A stretch of DNA of 64,000 nt from Octopus sinensis (lineage: Eukaryota), in contig NC_043008.1 in NCBI RefSeq assembly GCF_006345805.1, positions 38,750,001 through 38,814,000 on the forward strand. Reading direction: 5' to 3'. The translations under genes were made by a program, and so were the position numbers. The notes beneath the pieces were generated by a model. It was not told the origin of the DNA and did no database searches. It worked only from the letters and a program-made list of their open reading frames with translations. Below, piece by piece: positions 5,513 through 64,000 of this stretch. Position 1 is the stretch's first letter. The number at the start of each line of letters is the position of its first letter.

Positions 5513-5941
5513 TTACTCTTTTACTCTTTTACTTGTTTGAGTCATTTGACTGCGGCCATGCTGGAGCACCGCCTTTAGTCGAGCAAATTGACCCCAGGAC
5601 TTATTCTTTGTTAGCGTAGCCAAACCGCTAAGTTACGGGGACGTAAACAAGACAGCTTCAGATGTCAAGCGATGTTGGGGGGACAAACACAGACACGCAA
5701 ACACACACGCACAAACACACACACACACTCATGCATGCACGCACACACACACACCACATATGTATATACATATATATGACGGGCTTCTTTCAGTTTCTGT
5801 CTACCAGATCCATTCACAAGGCTTTGGTCGGCCCGAGGCTATAGTAGAAGACACTTGCCCAAGGTACCACGCAGTGGGACTGAACCTGAAACCATGTGGT
5901 TGGTAAGCAAGCTACTTACCACACAGCCACTCCTGCACCTA
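5513..5941 (-). mobile_element. tRNA-derived bipartite SINE, family B (internal CA/TA microsatellite)
   Basis: Reverse strand starts GGAGTGGCTGTGTGGTAAGTAGCTTGCTTACCAACCACATGGTTTCAGGTTCAGTCCC, contains CCTTGGGCAAGTGTCTTC (CORE-like) and ends in (AAAGAGT)n; at least 12 related copies in the window. Confidence 0.85.
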
Positions 5942-11047: not shown

Positions 11048-11480
11048 TCATCATCATCATCATCATCATTTAACGTCCGCTTTCCATGCTAGCATGGGTT
11101 GGACGGTTCAACTGGGGTCTGGGGAGCCCGAAGGCTGCACCAGGCCAGTCAGATCTGGCAGTGTTTCTACAGCTGGATGCCCTTCCTAACGCCAACCACT
11201 CCGAGAGTGTAGTGGGTGATTTTATGTGCCACCGACACAGGTGCCAGATGAGGCTGGCGAACGGCCACGCTCGGATGGTGTTTTTATGTGCCACCGACAC
11301 AGGTGCCAGATGAGGCTGACGAACGGCCACGATCGGATGGTGTTTTTACGTGCCCAGAGCACGGAGGCCAGTCGATGGGGTACTGGCTACGGCCCGTTGG
11401 ATGGTTTTCTTGTGTGCCACCGGCACTGGTGACCGCAAAGATACAAATTCCATTGATGTTCATCTATTTTGATTTGATTT
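11048..11480 (-). mobile_element. SINE/RTE-tail family D with an internal ~62-nt tandem repeat
   Basis: Reverse strand GGTTGGCGTTAGGAAGGGCATCCAGCTGTAGAAA motif and (GAT)n tail; 3-4 internal units starting tttatgtgccacc. Confidence 0.8.
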
Positions 11481-12394: not shown

Positions 12395-12840
12395 AACTTT
12401 TACTTGTTTCAGTCATTGGACTGCAGCCATACTGTAGCACTGCATTGAAAGGTTTAGTTCAGCAAACCGACCCTGGTATTGCGATTATGTCTCCTATTTA
12501 TTCTATGGTCTCTTTTTATCAAACGGCCAAGTTATGAGGACATAAGCCTAACATGCCAGATGTCAAGCAGTCATATAGGGATAGAGACAACGCACAAACA
12601 AACACACATGCACACACATATTTCTCTCTCCCCTCTCTCTCTCTCCATATATATACCTACATGTATATACACACATACGCACACACAATGAGCTTCAAGT
12701 ATCTGGCTAACAGATGTACTCACAAGGCTTTGGCTGTCTCGGACTATAGGAGACACTTACAAATGGTACTACACAGAGGAACTGAACCTGGAATAATGTG
12801 GTTGAGAAACAAACTCTTACCACCTACCTATGCCTGCACC
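12395..12840 (-). mobile_element. SINE family B, diverged
   Basis: Colinear with 5513-5941. Confidence 0.7.
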
Positions 12841-12841
12841 T

Positions 12842-12887
<46 letters not shown>

Positions 12888-20839: not shown

Positions 20840-21319
20840 AAGTACTAACGTTCACATTACATAACATGGTTCTAGTTAGTGATACTAAACTGAGCTGCAG
20901 TCCCCACTTCAGAACGTTGTAAGTTAACAAGGTTTTTGATAGACAGGAGAAATATCTTAATCTTGATGAAATTCTCTCTTTTTCTTTTTTGAAAAATATC
21001 TGCCCAGTCAGCATTTGGGAGGTGTAGGGTTCGATTCCCTATGGAAGCCTGCTGACCAAATCCTGTGCTGGTGACACATAAAAGGCGTCCACTTACACTC
21101 TTGTAGTTTTTTGGTGTTAGGAAGGGCATCAAGCTGTAGAAACCAAGCCAAAATCAGACTGGAGCTCTCCAGCTTACTGGTTCCATGCCAACATGGAAAA
21201 CAAAATCAATGAAGACGATGGTGGTGGTGGTGACAACAACAATGGTGATGATGATGATGCTGACGACGACGACTATGATGACGACGATGATAATGATATT
21301 GGTGGTAGTGATGATGATG

Positions 21320-21990
21320 CATCACCGCCGTTTAACGTCTGCTTTCCATGCTGGCATAGGTTGGATGGTTTAACTGAGAACTGGCGAGACAGAAGGGTGT
21401 ACGAGGCTCCAATCTGGTCTGGCAAGGTTTCTACAGCTGAATGCCCTTCCCAATGCCAACCACTCCAAAAGTGTAGTGGGTGCATTTTATGTGCCACCGG
21501 CATGAGGGCCAGTGAGGCAGTACTGGCATTGATCATGCTTGAATGAGGCTTTTTACATAAGGCTGGCACAGGACCAGTCAGGCAGCACTGGCATCAACCA
21601 CGCTCAAATGGTGCTTTATACATGTCAGTGGCACAGGAGCCAGTCAGGCAGCACCAGCAACAACCATGCTCAAATGGTACTTTTTATGTGCCACCAGTAT
21701 GGGACCAGTCAGGTAGCATTGGCATCAACTACACTCGAATGGTGCCTTATACATGTCACTGGCATGGGAGCCAGTTAAGCGACAGTGGCAACAACCATGC
21801 CCAGATGGTGCTTTTTATGTGCCACCAGCATGGGAGCCAGTCAGGTGGCACTGGCAGTGGCCATGCTCGAATGGTGCTTTTTACGTGCCACCAGCATGGG
21901 AGCAAGTCAGGTGGCACTGATTAGAAGTGGTCATGCTCAAATGATGCTTTTTACGTTCCACTGGCACAGGTGCCAGTCAGACAGTACTGG
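21320..21990 (-). mobile_element. SINE/RTE-tail family D with about 8 internal 63-70 nt tandem units
   Basis: Units beginning ttttatgtgccacc / ttttacgtgccacc repeat from about 21486 to 21980. Confidence 0.75.
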
Positions 21991-25242: not shown

Positions 25243-25720
25243 AATCATCATTGTTTAACGTCCGCTTTCCATGCTAGCATGGGTCAGACGATTTGACTGA
25301 GGACTGGTGAACTAGATGGCTGCACCAGGCTCCAAACTGATCTGGCAGAGTTTCTATAGCTGGATGCCCTTCCTAACGCCAACCACTCCGAGAGTGTAGT
25401 GGGTGCTTTTACGTGTCACCGGCATGAGGGCCAGTAAGGCAGTACTGACAACAGCCATGCTCAAATGGTGCTTTTTATGTGCCACCTGCACAGGAGCCAG
25501 TCCAGCAGTACTGGCAATGACCTCGCTCAAATGTTTTTTCATGTGCCACCAGCACAAGTACCAGTAAGGTGACACTGGTAACGATCACGCTCAAATGGTG
25601 TTTTTTACGTGCCACCAGCACAGAAGCCAGTTAGCTGCTCTGGCAACAATCATGCTCCACTAGCATGGATGACAGTCATCGAATTTGATTTCAATTTCCC
25701 ATGCCTCAACAGGTCTTCGC
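25243..25720 (-). mobile_element. SINE/RTE-tail family D with about 4 internal tandem units
   Basis: Colinear with 11048-11480. Confidence 0.75.
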
Positions 25721-25827: not shown

Positions 25828-25876
<49 letters not shown>

Positions 25877-25958
25877 ACACACACACATACACACACACGC
25901 ACACACGCACACATTCCACACATGCACATCAATGTACAGAATTCATAAGATGCCCTAC

Positions 25959-26009
25959 CTGATACAATCTTCAGAGAATGGAACAAGTTCAGCAATGTAC
26001 TGTACTTAC
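25959..26009 (-). CDS. Candidate 51-nt exon whose first bases form a 5' splice site (recursive-splice-site / RS-exon architecture)
   Basis: Reverse strand ctaat ctccatattttctttgcttttttcag|GTAAGTACAG...GTATCAG|gtaggg; one open frame (phase 1-1) xKYSTLLNLFHSLKIVS. Confidence 0.5.
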
Positions 26010-26236
26010 CTGAAAAAAGCAAAGAAAATATGGAGATTAGTACAAAAATAATGGCTGAAGTACAAATACAACATTACATGAAACAATTGTATGTGTGTAT
26101 GTGTGTGTGGAGAGAGAGAGAGAAGCAAATAAAGATCTTGTCATCAGTCAAATATGCTAACACGTAAGCCATATGTCTTCTATAAATCTATTTGTCTGTA
26201 TGTCTATCTGTCTGTCTGACTGTCTATCTATCTATC

Positions 26237-29635: not shown

Positions 29636-30709
29636 GAGAGAGTAAAGAGATATGAAAGTATATAAATGAGACTTCTCATAATTACACAAGTGTTAGATTA
29701 TCGCCCAAATTTTGTTTATTTTTAGCAGATTAAGATCAAATTAGCCTTATAGAAGCCATATTTCTGAAATTACCGACTTCATTGATGAATGAATGAATTG
29801 TAATAGGTTATGAAAAGAATGAAATATATGATGTATTTACGAGAGATTTACATCGTTATCCACCTCATAGGTCAAACTGAGATGAAATTTGATGATCCAG
29901 GAATAAGCGAAACTAGAGAGACTCAAATAAAATTTAGCTTCCACTTGCCAAAAGGTTCGTACAACAATTCTAGGATATATACACAAAACCTGATTACCAT
30001 TTGAAACATCTTATATCTTATATACTGTCTTCACCCATAGAATTAATAGAGTCGTTTCAAATCGGCCCTCACCTGCCAATGAGACAAAAGAGTAGGCAAC
30101 TTTTCAAGATATACATTAATTCAAAGGAGCCTGTTTGGTCTGCTGGATGAATAATGATGTAAATCTTTTCTAAATGCATCATATATTTAGTTCTTGAAAA
30201 TCTACCACAATTATTGGATGTATCTGATTACAATTTATGACTTTATCAACGATCTTGTAGAGTTGCTGAATTATTCTTCAGCAAAAAGTTTAGTTTATAA
30301 GTTATGGATTCCAAAATAATGATATTCCGCTGCTCACGATAAAGTAAATACCACTGGAAATGGTAGAAACTTAGCTTAGCATACTTAAACCATAAATTAA
30401 CGAACTTAATGTATACTATGGGTTGTGGCAATGAAAGGAAATCGTTAAATGCCTCAAATTTCAAACAAATATAGACAATATTACTGCTCAAATTTAGCTT
30501 AAAATTGCCATTACAAATATCTTAACGAACTCTCAATTTGGCTTCATTTCAAGTGTATATACTATACATCTACAAAGAACACAACCACATACGCACATAC
30601 ATTTATATATTGTAAGTGCACATTCAAACATTGTATCACATATATGTGCATGAAAATGATAAAGATGATATATGTGTATGTGTATATGCATATATACATA
30701 TATATACAT

Positions 30710-36618: not shown

Positions 36619-36718
36619 NNNNNNNNNNNNNNNNNNNNNNNNNNNNNNNNNNNNNNNNNNNNNNNNNNNNNNNNNNNNNNNNNNNNNNNNNNNNNNNNNN
36701 NNNNNNNNNNNNNNNNNN
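36619..36718. other. Assembly gap (100 N)
   Basis: Run of exactly 100 N, a placeholder-size gap. Confidence 1.
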
Positions 36719-40330: not shown

Positions 40331-40656
40331 GTGTGTGTTGTGTTGTGTGGTGTGTGTGTGTATATGTGTATATATATATCTATATATATTATAGATATAT
40401 ATATAATAGTATATAATATATATAAACGACTGTATTCTTTCAGTTTCACACACTAACAAGGTTTGGTGTCACGAGGCTGTAGAAGGACACACTTGCCCAA
40501 GCTCCCATGCAGTGGGACTGAACCCGAATCTATGTGGTTGGGCAGCAGTTTCATACCACACAGCCACGCCTGCATCGATATTATATATATATATATATAT
40601 AAATATGCTTATGTATGTGTTATGTGTGTACATACATACATACATACATACATACA

Positions 40657-43744: not shown

Positions 43745-44127
43745 CAGGAGTTAAAGATTAATGAGGAGCTTCTGGTTACCGTGAAGTCCTTATACGAATG
43801 CCCAGATGTTTGTGTTCGAGTGAATGTGTGCCTAATTGAAACCTTTTATCGTGAGATTGGAACATTGTCTGATGTGCATTAACACTTCTCTTTTTCATAA
43901 TTTTTATAAGCTGGGTTGACATACACGGCTGTTGTGGAAGTGGTATAACAATCGATGGTTGTAAGATCGATCGGCTTATATTTACAGATGAGATGGAGCT
44001 ACTTAGATTAGCAGGAGGTGATTTCCAGCATGCATTGAATTGGTTTCCTGCCGAATGCCGTAAAGCAAGAGTGAAATTTGGTGTTGCGATGACTCAGACA
44101 TTGGCCCTCTCAACAAACTCTTCCTAA
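43745..44127 (+). pseudogene. RTE-clade LINE reverse transcriptase fragment
   Basis: QELKINEELLVTVKSLYECPDVCVRVN.. / CALTLLFFIIFISWVD..ITIDGCKIDRLIFTDEMELL..FQHALNWFPAECRKARVK; FADD is degenerated to FTDE (43981-43992); one frameshift. Confidence 0.8.
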
Positions 44128-44139
44128 TGCATTCTGAAT

Positions 44140-44330
44140 GCTCAGTGGTTGGACGCCAACGAAGCTCAACGGCACTCCTGAAGCCAAAGTTGCACCAGAA
44201 GAAGGTAATGGTGACTGTTTGGTGGTCTACAGGCGGTCTCACCCATCACAGCTTTATGAATCCAGGCAAAACCATTACGGCAGAGAAGTACTGTCAGTAA
44301 ATGGATGAAATGCATAAGAAACTCCGACAT
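44140..44330 (+). pseudogene. mariner (Hsmar1/SETMAR-like) transposase fragment
   Basis: AQWLDANEAQRH / KPKLHQKKVMVTVWWSTGGLTHHSFMNPGKTITAEKYCQ*MDEMHKKLR. Confidence 0.85.
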
Positions 44331-46134: not shown

Positions 46135-46679
46135 TGACTGTATTGTATTATTCTGAAAAACTGGAGCTATTTCAATCGTAAATCAAAGTTCCACAGTTCC
46201 GATTGTCCAAACGATTCCTTTGATGTTCGAGAAATAGGAAAATTAGAATTACGATTTTAAAACCCTCGTAATGTTATTCACACATACACAAACACACACA
46301 CACATATACATATATACACACACACAACACACACACACATATATATATATACACACACACACACAGTCATATGTATATACCACGTATTCTTTTATTCTTT
46401 TATCAATTTCAGTCATTTGACTGCGACCATGCTGTAGCACCACCTCGAAGGGCTTTAGCTGGGCGATTCGACTATTTGTGAAGCGTGGTACTTATTCTAT
46501 CGTCCCATGTGGCGAACTGCTACGTTACGAGGACGTAAACACTAGCACCGGTTGTCAAGCAGTGTTGGGGGACAAACAGCCATGAAGACATGCACTCATA
46601 CATATATACATAAATACACGCACGTACAGACACACATGCACACATATACACACAGAGTAGTTGGACAAAATAAGATTTT

Positions 46680-47644
46680 GATATAGGGTAGGACCGCCTT
46701 TGGCAGTAATTACAGCTTGAATTCTACGAGGTATGGACTCGTACAAAGTTTGAATTGTTTCCAAAGGAATTTTTGTACATTCTTCGGCAACAACAGTTTT
46801 CAGTTCTTGTAATGATGATGGTGGAGGATATCGACTCCTTACCTGTCTTTTCTAAAATGCACCATAAATGTTCAATAATATTGAGATCTGGGGACTGTAG
46901 TGGCCAGATAAGATGTTCAACTTCACTAGAATGTTCCTCGTAACAACTTTAGCTGTGTGAATTGGTGCATTATCATCCTGAAAGATTGCTTTTCCCCCGG
47001 AAACAGTTCCGCAATCATTGAGTGAATTTGATCAAATATATAAAATGCTTAAACATTCTTGACTATTAATTTTGCCAAGAAGGGAAACTGTTCAACAGTT
47101 GGAAGAAGGCAGTCTGGGTCAAATGCTTCTTTTGGCTCTCTCCACACCTATATGCGGCTGGTGGTCGGAAATAAAATAAAGGACGACTCGTCCGAGAAAA
47201 TAACGTTCTTCCACTGATCTAGAGATCAATTTTGTAGGTTTTTATTCCACTATAAACGCTTTGCTCGTTTGTTTTTGAAAGTAATGGTTTTCTGATTGCA
47301 GCCCTCCCGTCAAATCCGGCTTAGTGCAGCTCCCGGCGAAGAGTTTTTGTGGAAACTAGGTTCTAGAGGTGGCCATTAAGCTGTGCGGTAATTTTGGTAG
47401 CTGTACCTTTGTGGTCCTTTCTAACAATATGCGTATGAGTCCGACGGTTCCTATCTGAAAGTTATGGTTTTCTTCCGGAGTTTTGTTTCGACCAGGAGGG
47501 TTTTCCCTCTTTCTCAAAGGCTGTTATTACTTTCGAGACAGTACTTGTTGATACACCAAAAATTTCGACTGTTTTCTTTACGCTAGCGCCTGCTATTCGA
47601 GCACCAACAATTTGACGTCATTGAAAATCCGATAGATCTGTCAT
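46680..47644 (-). pseudogene. Tc1-family transposase pseudogene (DD34E type)
   Basis: MTDLSDFQ*RQIVGARIAGASV..; WKNVIFSDESSF; IFQDDNAPIH; WPLQSPDLNIIEHLW; ESIPRRIQAVITAKGGPTLY; several stops, frameshifts and an internal deletion; TIRs not recognised. Confidence 0.92.
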
Positions 47645-51920: not shown

Positions 51921-52063
51921 AAATTCATTTTTTAAATGTCTTGCTTTGAAAAAATTGCATTGGATATGATAAGTAAACTTTTTGGTAGAAATGACTAATT
52001 GTCCCCCGTAGTGTGTGGCATGTATGTATAATAATGCCCTCTATATATAATATATATTATATA

Positions 52064-52114
<51 letters not shown>

Positions 52115-52779
52115 ACATATATACGACGGTCTTCTCTCAGTCTCCGTCTACCAGATCCACTCACAAGGCTTTGGTTGGCCCGAAGCTATAGTAGAAGACA
52201 TTTTCCCAAGGTGCCATGCAGTGGGACTGAACCCGGAACCATGTGGTTGGTAAGCAAGCTACTTACCACACAGCCACTCCTGCGCCTACATGTATATATA
52301 TAACATGGAATTAGGTGGACGTTATGTGGCCTGTCCACGTCGACAGTGAAGTCTCTGGTTATGGTTGCTGATCCATTTCTATTGCATTGCTGTTATCTTT
52401 TCTGTTTGTTTTTTTCTTTTTCTGTCAACGTCAGTAGTTTTCGTAATAAAAGTGGTGCTAAAGATGTTCGTAGTTAAGTGAAGGCCACTTCTGTTAATAC
52501 TTGTAGCGATCGGTGGGGAAGTCTCTTCACCATGTCCTCCTCCCACTTTTGTTATAACCTCTTCCTACCATTTCTTTCTCATTTGATGACGCTGTGTCAT
52601 TTATTCTTGACCGAAACAAGAAAACGGTTGCTTCCATTTGTTCTTAATCAGTTCTGCAACAAAATGGATAACAAGCAAGCAGTGGCTTTGTTTTTTTTGT
52701 GTGTGTGTTTGTTTCTTTTTGTTTTGTTTTTCATAATTTATGGAGCTATAAAAAATGTCTCAAATAGACAGGGGCAATA

Positions 52780-61666: not shown

Positions 61667-62921
<1,255 letters not shown>

Positions 62922-63360
62922 AATTGGCTGTGAGTACACATTAGTGACAAGACCCAGAAGAGGCTGAAATAAGTCTAGAGCTTTTGATAGCAGCTGCTGG
63001 GGCCAATCTTCCCTCTCCCTTTGATATATATTGTGTCTTCTAACACCGTACGTATGTAAGAAATTTCATTTCAGAAGGAAATCACTCTTTCTTGCCTGTC
63101 ACCTCTTTATATAAATTTATTGTCATACACAGATAGCTATTTTAACTTAATATTATTTCAATTGCATGCACGAGATTTTCATGTTAATTAGGTTTTTAAT
63201 TAACAAAACTCCACATATAGTTAATGTTGAATGAGACGTCTGAAAGAACGTTCATATTATGTGCATCGGATCGAGACAGAAAGACAAAATGTTTAACATT
63301 AACACTTAGCGTATTTAAAGAGCTTTCATTTCCAGTAGCAATTTTATTGTAGCAGATGTA

Positions 63361-64000
63361 TCCGGCTAAGTAAAAAAGGAAGCAACGTTTTGAAACATGA
63401 ATTTCATCACAATATATTTCAACAATGCGGAACTTTTATTCATCAAAGTAAGTACCATTAGGATCAACGCATTTATGCCAACGAGTTACAAGTTTGTTTA
63501 TTCCGGAAACATAAAAATCGGGAGTTCGGGAACTGATGAACTCTTTGAACGCACTTTCAACATCAGTTTGATTTTTGAGCTTCTTCTCTCGCAGGAAACC
63601 GTCAAGGTACTTGAAGAAGTGGTAGTCGGTAGAAGAAAGGTCTGGGGAATAAGCTGGGTGCGGAAGAACTCCACAGCCAATTCTGTCAACTTTAGGAGTG
63701 TCATTAGTGAAATGTGTGGTCGAGCATTGTCATTTAAGAATGATTGGCCTTTTTTTGTTGACCTGTCTGGGACAGATGAATAGCAGTTTATCGTTCATTT
63801 TGGCAATTTCATTGCAACATGTAATGGTTTTTCCAGGTTTTAAGAAGTTATAGTGGTTAAGTCCTTTTGAAGGGCTCGGGTCTAGAGAAATTTTCTGATG
63901 CTTCATTTTGGTCTAACCACTGTGACGAACGTTTTTTTGTTATTGTACAGAGCCCACTTTTCATCGCAAGTTACAATACGATGGAGAAATGGATCGGTCT
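63361..64000 (-). pseudogene. mariner (DD34D, Hsmar1/SETMAR-like) element remnant, runs off the window end
   Basis: DPFLHRIVTCDEKWALYNN; NDNARPH; HPAYSPDLSSTDYHFFKYLDGFL; GINKLVTRWHKCVDPNGTYFDE* (stop 63436-63438); TA at 63359-63360 next to the presumed TIR. Confidence 0.92.

What the first reader, a model, noticed from the sequence alone, without database searches (positions are those of the whole stretch)
25921..26040. Textbook recursive-splice-site architecture on the minus strand
Seen: CTAAT branch-point motif about 30 nt upstream, polypyrimidine tract, then CAG|GTAAGT (a perfect acceptor immediately followed by a perfect donor) at 26009, and a weaker donor CAG|GTAGGG 51 nt downstream. 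There is also a UGC 11 nt before the AG and a UGCAUG at 25926-25921. Established: AG|GT ratchet points with a cryptic RS-exon subdivide very long introns in Drosophila and vertebrate neural genes. Inference: a recursive site in a long cephalopod intron, with optional in-frame inclusion of 17 codons; I am not aware of this being characterised in molluscs.
Basis: partly seen in the sequence, partly recalled or inferred. Interest (0 to 1): 0.72.

Follow-up and report, generated by a model that had tools for sequence, protein, structure and literature searches.

The report
Splice-like AG|GT motif, function unproven
A stretch of repeat-rich, non-coding animal DNA carries a near-perfect "acceptor-then-donor" splice signal of the kind that removes very long introns in steps, but nothing available here shows this strand is transcribed, so it may equally be a chance motif.

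Summary
The bare 9-mer CAGGTAAGT fits chance (1 seen, 0.51 expected). The full composite (pyrimidine tract, CAG|GTAAGT) is the best of 338 AGGT sites in the window and is expected only 0.005-0.05 times per window under five null models. Adding the second donor 51 nt downstream lowers that to at most about 0.0014. The branch-point-like motif, UGC and UGCAUG add little. This is unusual for one window, but a genome of a few gigabases would still hold hundreds to thousands of bare composites by chance.

None of the context that defines a recursive site could be tested. I found no exon, no RNA gene and no strand asymmetry in the window, and had no related genome or RNA data. The cephalopod attribution could not be verified. 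The 51-nt segment is open in only one of three frames, so "in-frame inclusion of 17 codons" holds for one intron phase only.

Verdict: observation confirmed, interpretation cannot be decided here. My estimates: about 0.45 unused chance motif, 0.30 genuine recursive site, 0.15 ordinary cryptic or cassette exon, 0.10 relic. If real, it would be a new member of a known kind. Interest is low to moderate.

The parts
26088..26109 (-). Imperfect (CA)n tract, about 78 nt upstream of the AG|GT on the minus-strand RNA. It is complementary to the downstream (UG)n tract.
26036..26040 (-). CTAAT branch-point-like motif (YTNAY), branch A at 26037, 27 nt before the G of the AG.
   Evidence: expected by chance 38% of the time
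26013..26030 (-). Polypyrimidine tract tattttctttgctttttt (16 of 18 pyrimidines), TT at -6/-5, no AG in the 40 nt upstream.
   Evidence: only 0.11% of the window's 6,513 AG sites have an upstream score this high
26010..26012 (-). CAG acceptor. The putative first-step 3' splice site cuts after 26010.
26004..26009 (-). GTAAGT, the consensus 5' splice site that would be regenerated once an upstream exon is joined to 26009.
   Evidence: own PWM donor score 12.8; only 3 donors this strong in the window on both strands
25959..26009 (-). 51-nt candidate RS-exon. Frames 0 and 1 contain stops; frame 2 is open (KYSTLLNLFHSLKIVS).
   Evidence: no Pfam family for the ORF across it
25953..25958 (-). GTAGGG, the weaker downstream donor (preceded by CAG) that could define the RS-exon.
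   Evidence: own PWM score 10.9; 0.9% chance of one this good at 30-100 nt
25921..25926 (-). UGCAUG (Rbfox-type hexamer), 32 nt downstream of the second donor, on the edge of the microsatellite.
   Evidence: 6% chance within 100 nt
25831..25913 (-). (UG)~41 microsatellite on the minus-strand RNA, starting 45 nt downstream of the second donor.

Best explanation
Most likely, by a small margin, this is an unselected juxtaposition of splice-like motifs in repeat-rich, non-coding DNA. The sequence could be used by the spliceosome, but it is either not transcribed on the minus strand or not maintained by selection, so it has no dedicated function.

Shown: the motifs exist, and the composite is the best in the window.
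Not shown: any transcription, gene context or conservation.

Inferred mechanism if minus-strand pre-mRNA does run through here. I put that at roughly 0.45 after seeing the motif, against a prior of about 0.2-0.25, because large animal genomes are about half transcribed and either strand is equally likely.
1. U2AF and U2 would recognise the pyrimidine tract and CAG, helped by exon definition from the GTAGGG donor at 25958.
2. The upstream exon would be joined to 26009.
3. The regenerated, stronger GTAAGT would then out-compete GTAGGG, so the 51 nt would be removed together with the rest of the intron.
For: - A genome of a few gigabases would still hold on the order of 140-2,200 composites this good by chance, and roughly 1-65 that also have the second donor. 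This extrapolates; the genome size is my assumption.
- No exon, RNA gene or strand asymmetry was found in 64 kb.
- 24% of the window is tandem repeat, and the site sits in a 175-nt unique island between microsatellites and mobile-element copies.
- The second-best composite in the same window (30072, minus strand) lies inside an inverted-repeat element and lacks the finer features, showing that near-perfect AG|GT composites do arise here without host function.
- In humans only 342 of 36,870 conserved, strong-3'ss AGGT sites in long sense introns had junction reads in the three cell lines analysed, and 16 showed a saw-tooth (PMC6110456).
Against: - For a single window the full architecture is rare under every null tried: 0.005-0.05 for the composite and at most 0.0014 with the second donor.
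- It carries TT at -5/-6, seen in 196 of 197 fly ratchet points (bioRxiv 10.1101/006163).
- It shows the donor-strength order (ratchet donor stronger than RS-exon donor) that predicts recursion with exon skipping (PMC8605326).
- If recursive sites are as dense in this animal's long introns as in flies, a genuine site becomes the better explanation.
Confidence: 0.45

Rival explanations
1. A genuine recursive splice site (ratchet point with a cryptic RS-exon) inside a long intron of a minus-strand gene whose exons lie outside, or undetected within, this window. The intron would be removed in two steps through 26010|26009, and the 51-nt RS-exon would normally be skipped because the regenerated GTAAGT beats GTAGGG.
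For: - All sequence-level criteria are met.
- TT at -5/-6, as in 196 of 197 fly ratchet points.
- The ratchet donor is stronger than the RS-exon donor, as in most skipped cryptic RS-exons (PMC8605326).
- Stops in 2 of 3 frames fit cryptic RS-exons, which are generally out of frame or carry premature stops.
- The architecture is rare by chance per window.
- 64 kb with no detectable exon is compatible with a very long intron.
Against: - There is no evidence of minus-strand transcription, of a host gene or of conservation.
- Strand indicators are flat.
- The human data show the motif alone predicts robust recursion poorly.
- The nulls may be too optimistic if the core descends from a mobile element family absent from this window.
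Confidence: 0.3
2. An ordinary cryptic, poison or alternative 51-nt cassette exon of a minus-strand gene, used or repressed as an exon rather than as a ratchet. Its inclusion might be controlled by the flanking repeats: a (UG)~41 tract 45 nt downstream (the TDP-43 or CELF type of site), a UGCAUG 32 nt downstream (Rbfox type), a (CA)n tract upstream, or the CA/UG stem that could loop the unit out.
For: - A strong acceptor plus a usable donor 51 nt apart.
- TDP-43-repressed cryptic exons are non-conserved and flanked by UG microsatellites upstream, downstream or within (PMC5289002).
- The minimum-free-energy fold pairs the CA tract with the UG tract and encloses the whole unit (-85.4 kcal/mol, z = -2.72).
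Against: - Same lack of any transcription evidence.
- AC/GT microsatellites are very common here (33 tracts, 5 complementary pairs within 50-400 nt), so the flanking repeats are weak evidence.
- The centroid fold does not keep the long stem.
- A GTAAGT at the very start of the exon would favour re-splicing over stable inclusion.
- Whether the relevant proteins have the same specificity in this animal is assumed, not shown.
Confidence: 0.15
3. A relic: an exon-intron fragment carried in by a mobile element, a segmental duplication or a decayed gene copy. The splice signals would then be inherited rather than arising by chance, but would no longer be used.
For: - The site is embedded among mobile-element copies: a 66-bp tandem-repeat element at 25402-25647, tRNA-like SINE-type repeats at 26.35-27.4 kb, and Tc1/mariner fragments elsewhere.
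- The runner-up composite at 30072 sits inside an inverted-repeat element.
- Inheritance would explain why the architecture is better than chance.
Against: - The core at 25915-26090 has no second copy in the window even at relaxed stringency.
- No terminal inverted or direct repeats bound it other than microsatellites.
- The ORF across it has no protein-family match.
Confidence: 0.1

Closest known systems
Drosophila intronic ratchet points with cryptic RS-exons (Ubx, kuz, luna and others; more than 500 sites)
   Same: Juxtaposed pyrimidine tract-CAG|GTAAGT, TT at -5/-6, a short downstream cryptic exon with a weaker donor, and stop codons in most frames of that exon.
   Different: Fly sites are defined by saw-tooth coverage, junction and lariat reads and very strong conservation of the acceptor|donor motif, and they lie in the longest 3% of introns. 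None of that could be examined here. The host gene, strand and taxon are unknown.
Vertebrate recursive sites and RS-exons (9 fully suppressed sites in long neural genes; 342 candidate and 16 saw-tooth sites in PMC6110456)
   Same: AGGT with a strong 3' splice site, a strong reconstituted 5' splice site as in the saw-tooth class, exon definition through a downstream donor, and donor competition deciding skipping or inclusion.
   Different: Vertebrate calls require a long annotated intron, PhastCons conservation and junction reads. Here only the motif is available.
Ubx m1/m2 expressed RS-exons
   Same: The same length (51 nt, 17 codons), starting with a regenerated donor.
   Different: Ubx m1/m2 are coding and ultraconserved at every position. 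Here two of three frames are closed and conservation is unknown. The equal length is most likely coincidence.
TDP-43-repressed cryptic exons flanked by UG microsatellites
   Same: A short intronic pseudo-exon with a long (UG)n tract next to it, 45 nt downstream of the donor.
   Different: This class is defined by de-repression when TDP-43 is lost, in mouse and human. Nothing of that kind is known or testable here, and UG/AC repeats are abundant in this window.

Membership tests
Recursive splice site (ratchet point with RS-exon) | AG|GT junction with a strong 3' splice site: pyrimidine tract, YAG, AG-free zone, and TT at -5/-6 in flies | tested here: met
   14 of 16 pyrimidines at -20..-5, TT at -6/-5, no AG in the 40 nt upstream; the upstream score is reached by only 0.11% of AG sites in the window
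Recursive splice site (ratchet point with RS-exon) | Strong reconstituted 5' splice site immediately after the AG | tested here: met
   GTAAGT at 26009-26004; the downstream half-score is reached by 1.2% of GT sites
Recursive splice site (ratchet point with RS-exon) | Branch-point motif 20-50 nt upstream | tested here: met
   CTAAT with branch A at 26037. This is weak evidence: expected by chance 38% of the time
Recursive splice site (ratchet point with RS-exon) | Short downstream RS-exon with its own, usually weaker, donor for exon definition | tested here: met
   CAG|GTAGGG 51 nt downstream, own PWM score 10.9 against 12.8 for the ratchet donor; 0.9% chance
Recursive splice site (ratchet point with RS-exon) | Lies on the sense strand of a long intron, kilobases from annotated exons | tested here: inconclusive
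   No exon found in the window by a splice-plus-ORF scan or by Pfam with a working control. The homology searches are void (against 45). Strand indicators are flat. No annotation was accessible
Recursive splice site (ratchet point with RS-exon) | Evolutionary conservation of the acceptor|donor motif | not testable with these tools
   No related eukaryotic genome is available. The exact 24-mer is absent from the metagenome and prokaryote genome collections. Window ORFs are not in the protein collection
Recursive splice site (ratchet point with RS-exon) | Splicing intermediates: junction reads to the site, saw-tooth coverage, recursive lariats | not testable with these tools
   No RNA-seq data are accessible
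TDP-43-type UG-flanked cryptic exon | UG microsatellite next to a non-annotated intronic exon | tested here: met
   (UG)~41 at 25913-25831 on the minus-strand RNA, 45 nt from the donor. Such tracts are common here (33 AC/GT tracts)
TDP-43-type UG-flanked cryptic exon | Exon de-repressed when the UG-binding repressor is lost | not testable with these tools
   Requires a knock-down and RNA-seq in the source organism
Coding cassette exon | Open reading frame compatible with the flanking exons, and protein homology | tested here: inconclusive
   Only 1 of 3 frames is open. No Pfam match for the ORF across the site. A 16-17-residue peptide is too short for homology detection

The most novel reading that the evidence does not exclude
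This is a genuine, selected recursive splice site in a very long intron of a minus-strand (probably neural) gene of a mollusc. That would be the first ratchet point described outside arthropods and vertebrates. It would have a 51-nt RS-exon that is normally skipped by donor competition, with inclusion possibly tuned by the flanking CA and UG repeats and a UGCAUG.
Probability: 0.3. Interest if true: 0.55.

Novelty: new member of a known kind. Interest (0 to 1): 0.27.

Why it matters
Recursive splicing has been mapped only in flies and vertebrates. No paper in the held library studies it in molluscs or cephalopods.

A validated site in a lophotrochozoan would support a bilaterian-ancestral origin for the ratchet and RS-exon mechanism. 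It would also give a way to study how animals with very large neural genes process their longest introns.

One unvalidated motif cannot carry that claim. The useful outcome here is a precise, cheap test: junction reads at 26009, conservation of the AG|GT, and a genome-wide sense-versus-antisense count of such composites. Realistic chance rates to judge it against are given above.

Tried and rejected
1. U1 snRNA gene on the plus strand. The reverse complement of the site reads ACTTACCTG, like the U1 5' end, but the following bases do not match and Rfam finds nothing in the window. Rejected.

2. Real coding exon. The ORF across the site has no Pfam family and only one frame is open. Not supported, though a 17-codon exon is below the detection limit.

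3. Exon search with three concatenated-ORF queries to the search for homologous proteins. All returned nothing, but a 97-aa mariner-like ORF placed as a control also returned nothing, while the same ORF alone finds 4,037 relatives. These three negatives are void. An earlier attempt failed on the length limit.

4. The same ORF sets against Pfam with an internal control. The control was recovered and nothing else scored. This is a valid negative of limited sensitivity.

5. Exact look-ups of 20 window ORFs in the protein collection. None is present, so I had no route to the source contig, its annotation or other assemblies.

6. Exact 24-mer of the site in the metagenome and prokaryote genome collections. 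No hits, as expected.

7. Inferring the transcribed strand from U1-like versus poly(A)-signal hexamers, AT and GC skews after repeat masking, and SINE-like orientation. All flat.

8. Taxon check through the closest transposase relatives. They are unnamed ENA, Logan and JGI proteins, so the cephalopod origin is not verified.

9. A second ratchet point at 30072 (minus strand). It lies inside an inverted-repeat element, lacks TT at -5/-6, has no branch motif and has no downstream donor. Rejected as a companion site.

10. Mobile-element membership of the core. There is no second copy in the window and no bounding repeats other than microsatellites. Not shown, and not excluded genome-wide.

Full report
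**What is there.** Read on the minus strand, the region runs 5' to 3' as follows:
- an imperfect (CA)n tract at 26109-26088;
- CTAAT at 26040-26036, with the branch-type A at 26037;
- an 18-nt pyrimidine tract at 26030-26013;
- CAG at 26012-26010, directly abutting GTAAGT at 26009-26004;
- a 51-nt segment at 26009-25959 that ends in CAG;
- GTAGGG at 25958-25953;
- TGCATG at 25926-25921;
- a (TG)~41 microsatellite at 25913-25831.

Every coordinate in the finding is correct to within one base. The site also has TT at -6/-5 and no AG in the 40 nt upstream.

**Is it more than chance?** The bare 9-mer is not: CAGGTAAGT occurs once against 0.51 expected, and 39 of 100 shuffles contain at least one. 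YAGGTRAGT occurs 4 times against 1.83 expected.

The composite is different. With simple acceptor and donor PWMs of my own, it ranks first of 338 AGGT sites on both strands. I used the window's own 6,513 AG and 7,511 GT sites as the null. Only 0.11% of AGs have an upstream tract this good, and 1.2% of GTs have a +3..+6 this good. That gives 0.0045-0.007 expected composites per window.

An independent rule-based definition (at least 13 of 16 pyrimidines, AG-free, YAG|GTRAGT) finds only this site. It is expected 0.021-0.022 times under shuffles that preserve local composition, 0.006 times under an order-3 Markov model and 0.047 times under an order-5 model.

A second donor as good as CAG|GTAGGG at 30-100 nt is itself a 0.9% event. 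The joint expectation therefore lies between about 4e-5 and 0.0014 per window.

The branch motif (38%), the UGC and the UGCAUG (6%, and sitting on a microsatellite edge) add essentially nothing.

Caveats: the PWMs are approximate and the thresholds were set after the fact. If the core descends from a mobile-element family, these nulls are too optimistic. Extrapolated to a genome of 2-3 Gb (my assumption), chance alone would give roughly 140-2,200 such composites and about 1-65 with the second donor.

**Surroundings.** The window is 35% G+C. It contains a 100-N gap at 36619-36718, and 24% of it is tandem repeat. It holds:
- decayed mariner and Tc1 transposase fragments;
- 16 copies of a SINE-like repeat;
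- a mobile element with internal 66-bp tandem repeats at three places, one of them 25402-25647, about 310 nt downstream of the candidate exon on the minus strand.

The core at 25915-26090 is single-copy within the window, even at relaxed stringency. It is bounded only by microsatellites.

There are no Rfam families and no tRNAs.

**Gene context.** I could not establish any. A splice-signal plus open-frame scan gave no convincing exon on either strand.

Three large homology searches with concatenated ORF segments returned nothing. They must be discarded: the 97-aa mariner-like ORF I placed in the last one as a control also returned nothing, yet the same ORF searched alone finds 4,037 relatives with a best score of 117 bits.

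Repeating the test against Pfam with an internal control recovered the control (Transposase_1, E = 1.2e-13; HTH_23) and nothing else. So no unique ORF segment of 45 aa or more, on either strand, encodes a recognisable domain.

Indicators of a transcribed strand are flat:
- U1-like hexamers 48 against 49;
- poly(A) hexamers 109 against 95 (p = 0.36);
- skews near zero;
- SINE-like copies 10 plus and 6 minus.

Twenty window ORFs are absent from the protein collection, and the site's 24-mer is absent from the searchable DNA collections. I therefore had no access to the source annotation, to other assemblies or to related species. The closest transposase relatives are unnamed, so the cephalopod attribution stays unverified.

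**How it would work if transcribed.** This is inference. The tract and CAG would recruit U2AF and U2, with exon definition supplied by the GTAGGG donor 51 nt downstream. The upstream exon would be ligated to 26009, regenerating a consensus GTAAGT donor.

That donor is stronger than GTAGGG (12.8 against 10.9 on my scale), so the competition model predicts re-splicing from 26009 and loss of the 51 nt with the rest of the intron (PMC8605326).

The 51 nt preserve the reading frame, but frames 0 and 1 contain stops. Inclusion would be harmless in only one intron phase. [quoted passage not shown]

**Comparison with known systems.** The sequence-level hallmarks match fly ratchet points: 196 of 197 have TT at -5/-6 (bioRxiv 10.1101/006163). 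They also match the strong-donor saw-tooth class of human sites (PMC6110456).

The defining evidence for those families is a long sense intron, conservation and splicing intermediates. None of it could be tested here.

The human numbers are a warning. Of 36,870 conserved AGGT sites with a strong 3' splice site in long introns, 342 had junction reads in the cell lines studied, and 16 showed a saw-tooth.

The equal length to the 51-nt Ubx m1/m2 RS-exons is probably coincidence.

**Rival readings.**
- The same signals could define an ordinary cryptic or poison exon. The long UG tract 45 nt downstream resembles the UG-flanked cryptic exons repressed by TDP-43 (PMC5289002).
- The upstream CA tract can pair with the UG tract to loop out the whole unit in the minimum-free-energy fold (-85.4 kcal/mol, z = -2.72). 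However, the centroid fold does not keep that stem, and complementary AC/GT pairs are common here (5 within 50-400 nt).
- A relic of a mobile element or gene fragment is also possible.
- The second-best composite, at 30072 on the minus strand, lies within inverted repeats. It lacks TT at -5/-6, a branch motif and any downstream donor. I do not count it as a companion site. It shows instead that strong AG|GT composites arise here without host function.

**Verdict.** The interpretation cannot be decided with the tools at hand.

My estimates:

| Reading | Probability |
|---|---|
| Unused chance motif | 0.45 |
| Genuine recursive site | 0.30 |
| Conventional cryptic or cassette exon | 0.15 |
| Relic | 0.10 |

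If real, it would be a new member of a known kind in an unstudied phylum. No paper in the held library addresses recursive splicing in molluscs. That would be worth a cheap RNA-seq and conservation check, but it is not a discovery in itself.

Noticed in passing
window 30050-30100 (minus strand), within 29779-30252: The second-best acceptor|donor composite in the window (ttggcag|GTGAGG at 30072, minus strand, score 26.0 against 26.9 for the target). It lies between inverted-repeat arms (29815-29877 and 30133-30195, 76% complementary; outer arms 29779-29804 and 30227-30252), which looks like a small MITE-type element. It lacks TT at -5/-6, a branch motif and a downstream donor.
   Followed up: yes
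window 25828-25913 and 26088-26109: Complementary microsatellites bracket the candidate unit: (CA)n upstream and (UG)n downstream on the minus-strand RNA, up to 22 nt at 95% complementarity. The minimum-free-energy fold pairs them and loops out the acceptor, exon and donor (z = -2.72), but the centroid fold does not keep the stem. Five such complementary pairs occur in the window, so this may be incidental.
   Followed up: partly
window 11220-11362, 21065-21967, 25402-25647: A repeat family with internal ~66-bp tandem units (consensus includes TTTTACGTGCCACCAGCAC) occurs at three places. 13 units match within 3 mismatches, against 0.01 expected; 12 of the 13 are on the plus strand. These stretches account for the local G+C peaks near 20-22 kb and 24-26 kb.
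   Followed up: partly
window 43873-44297 (+), 46523-47200 (-), 63439-63912 (-): Decayed, frameshifted Tc1/mariner transposase fragments. Pfam gives Transposase_1 (E = 1.5e-15) at about 44.1-44.3 kb, and DDE_3 (weak) plus HTH_23 at about 46.5-47.2 kb. The 97-aa ORF at 63439-63729 has no Pfam hit but finds 4,037 relatives in the exhaustive search.
   Followed up: partly
window-wide, e.g. 5758-5941, 12647-12856, 40361-40591, 51950-52450: A SINE-like interspersed repeat, 16 copies (10 plus, 6 minus). About 40% of all ORF segments of 35 aa or more are repeated within the window, and 24% of the window is masked by Tandem Repeats Finder.
   Followed up: partly
window 36619-36718: A run of exactly 100 N, which is presumably a scaffold gap, so the window comes from a scaffolded assembly.
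   Followed up: no
window 62001-64000 (especially 62394-62940): Strong G-over-C skew (+0.47) and raised G+C (0.42). Low-complexity proline- and serine-rich ORFs run on the minus strand (PPSPPSSSN repeats), that is, a G/A-rich simple repeat on the plus strand.
   Followed up: no
method (against 45 and 52): Long queries made of many ORF segments joined by X spacers return nothing from the search for homologous proteins, even for a segment that finds thousands of relatives when searched alone. The same concatenation works with hmmscan against Pfam. Negatives from such concatenated queries should not be trusted without an internal control.
   Followed up: yes
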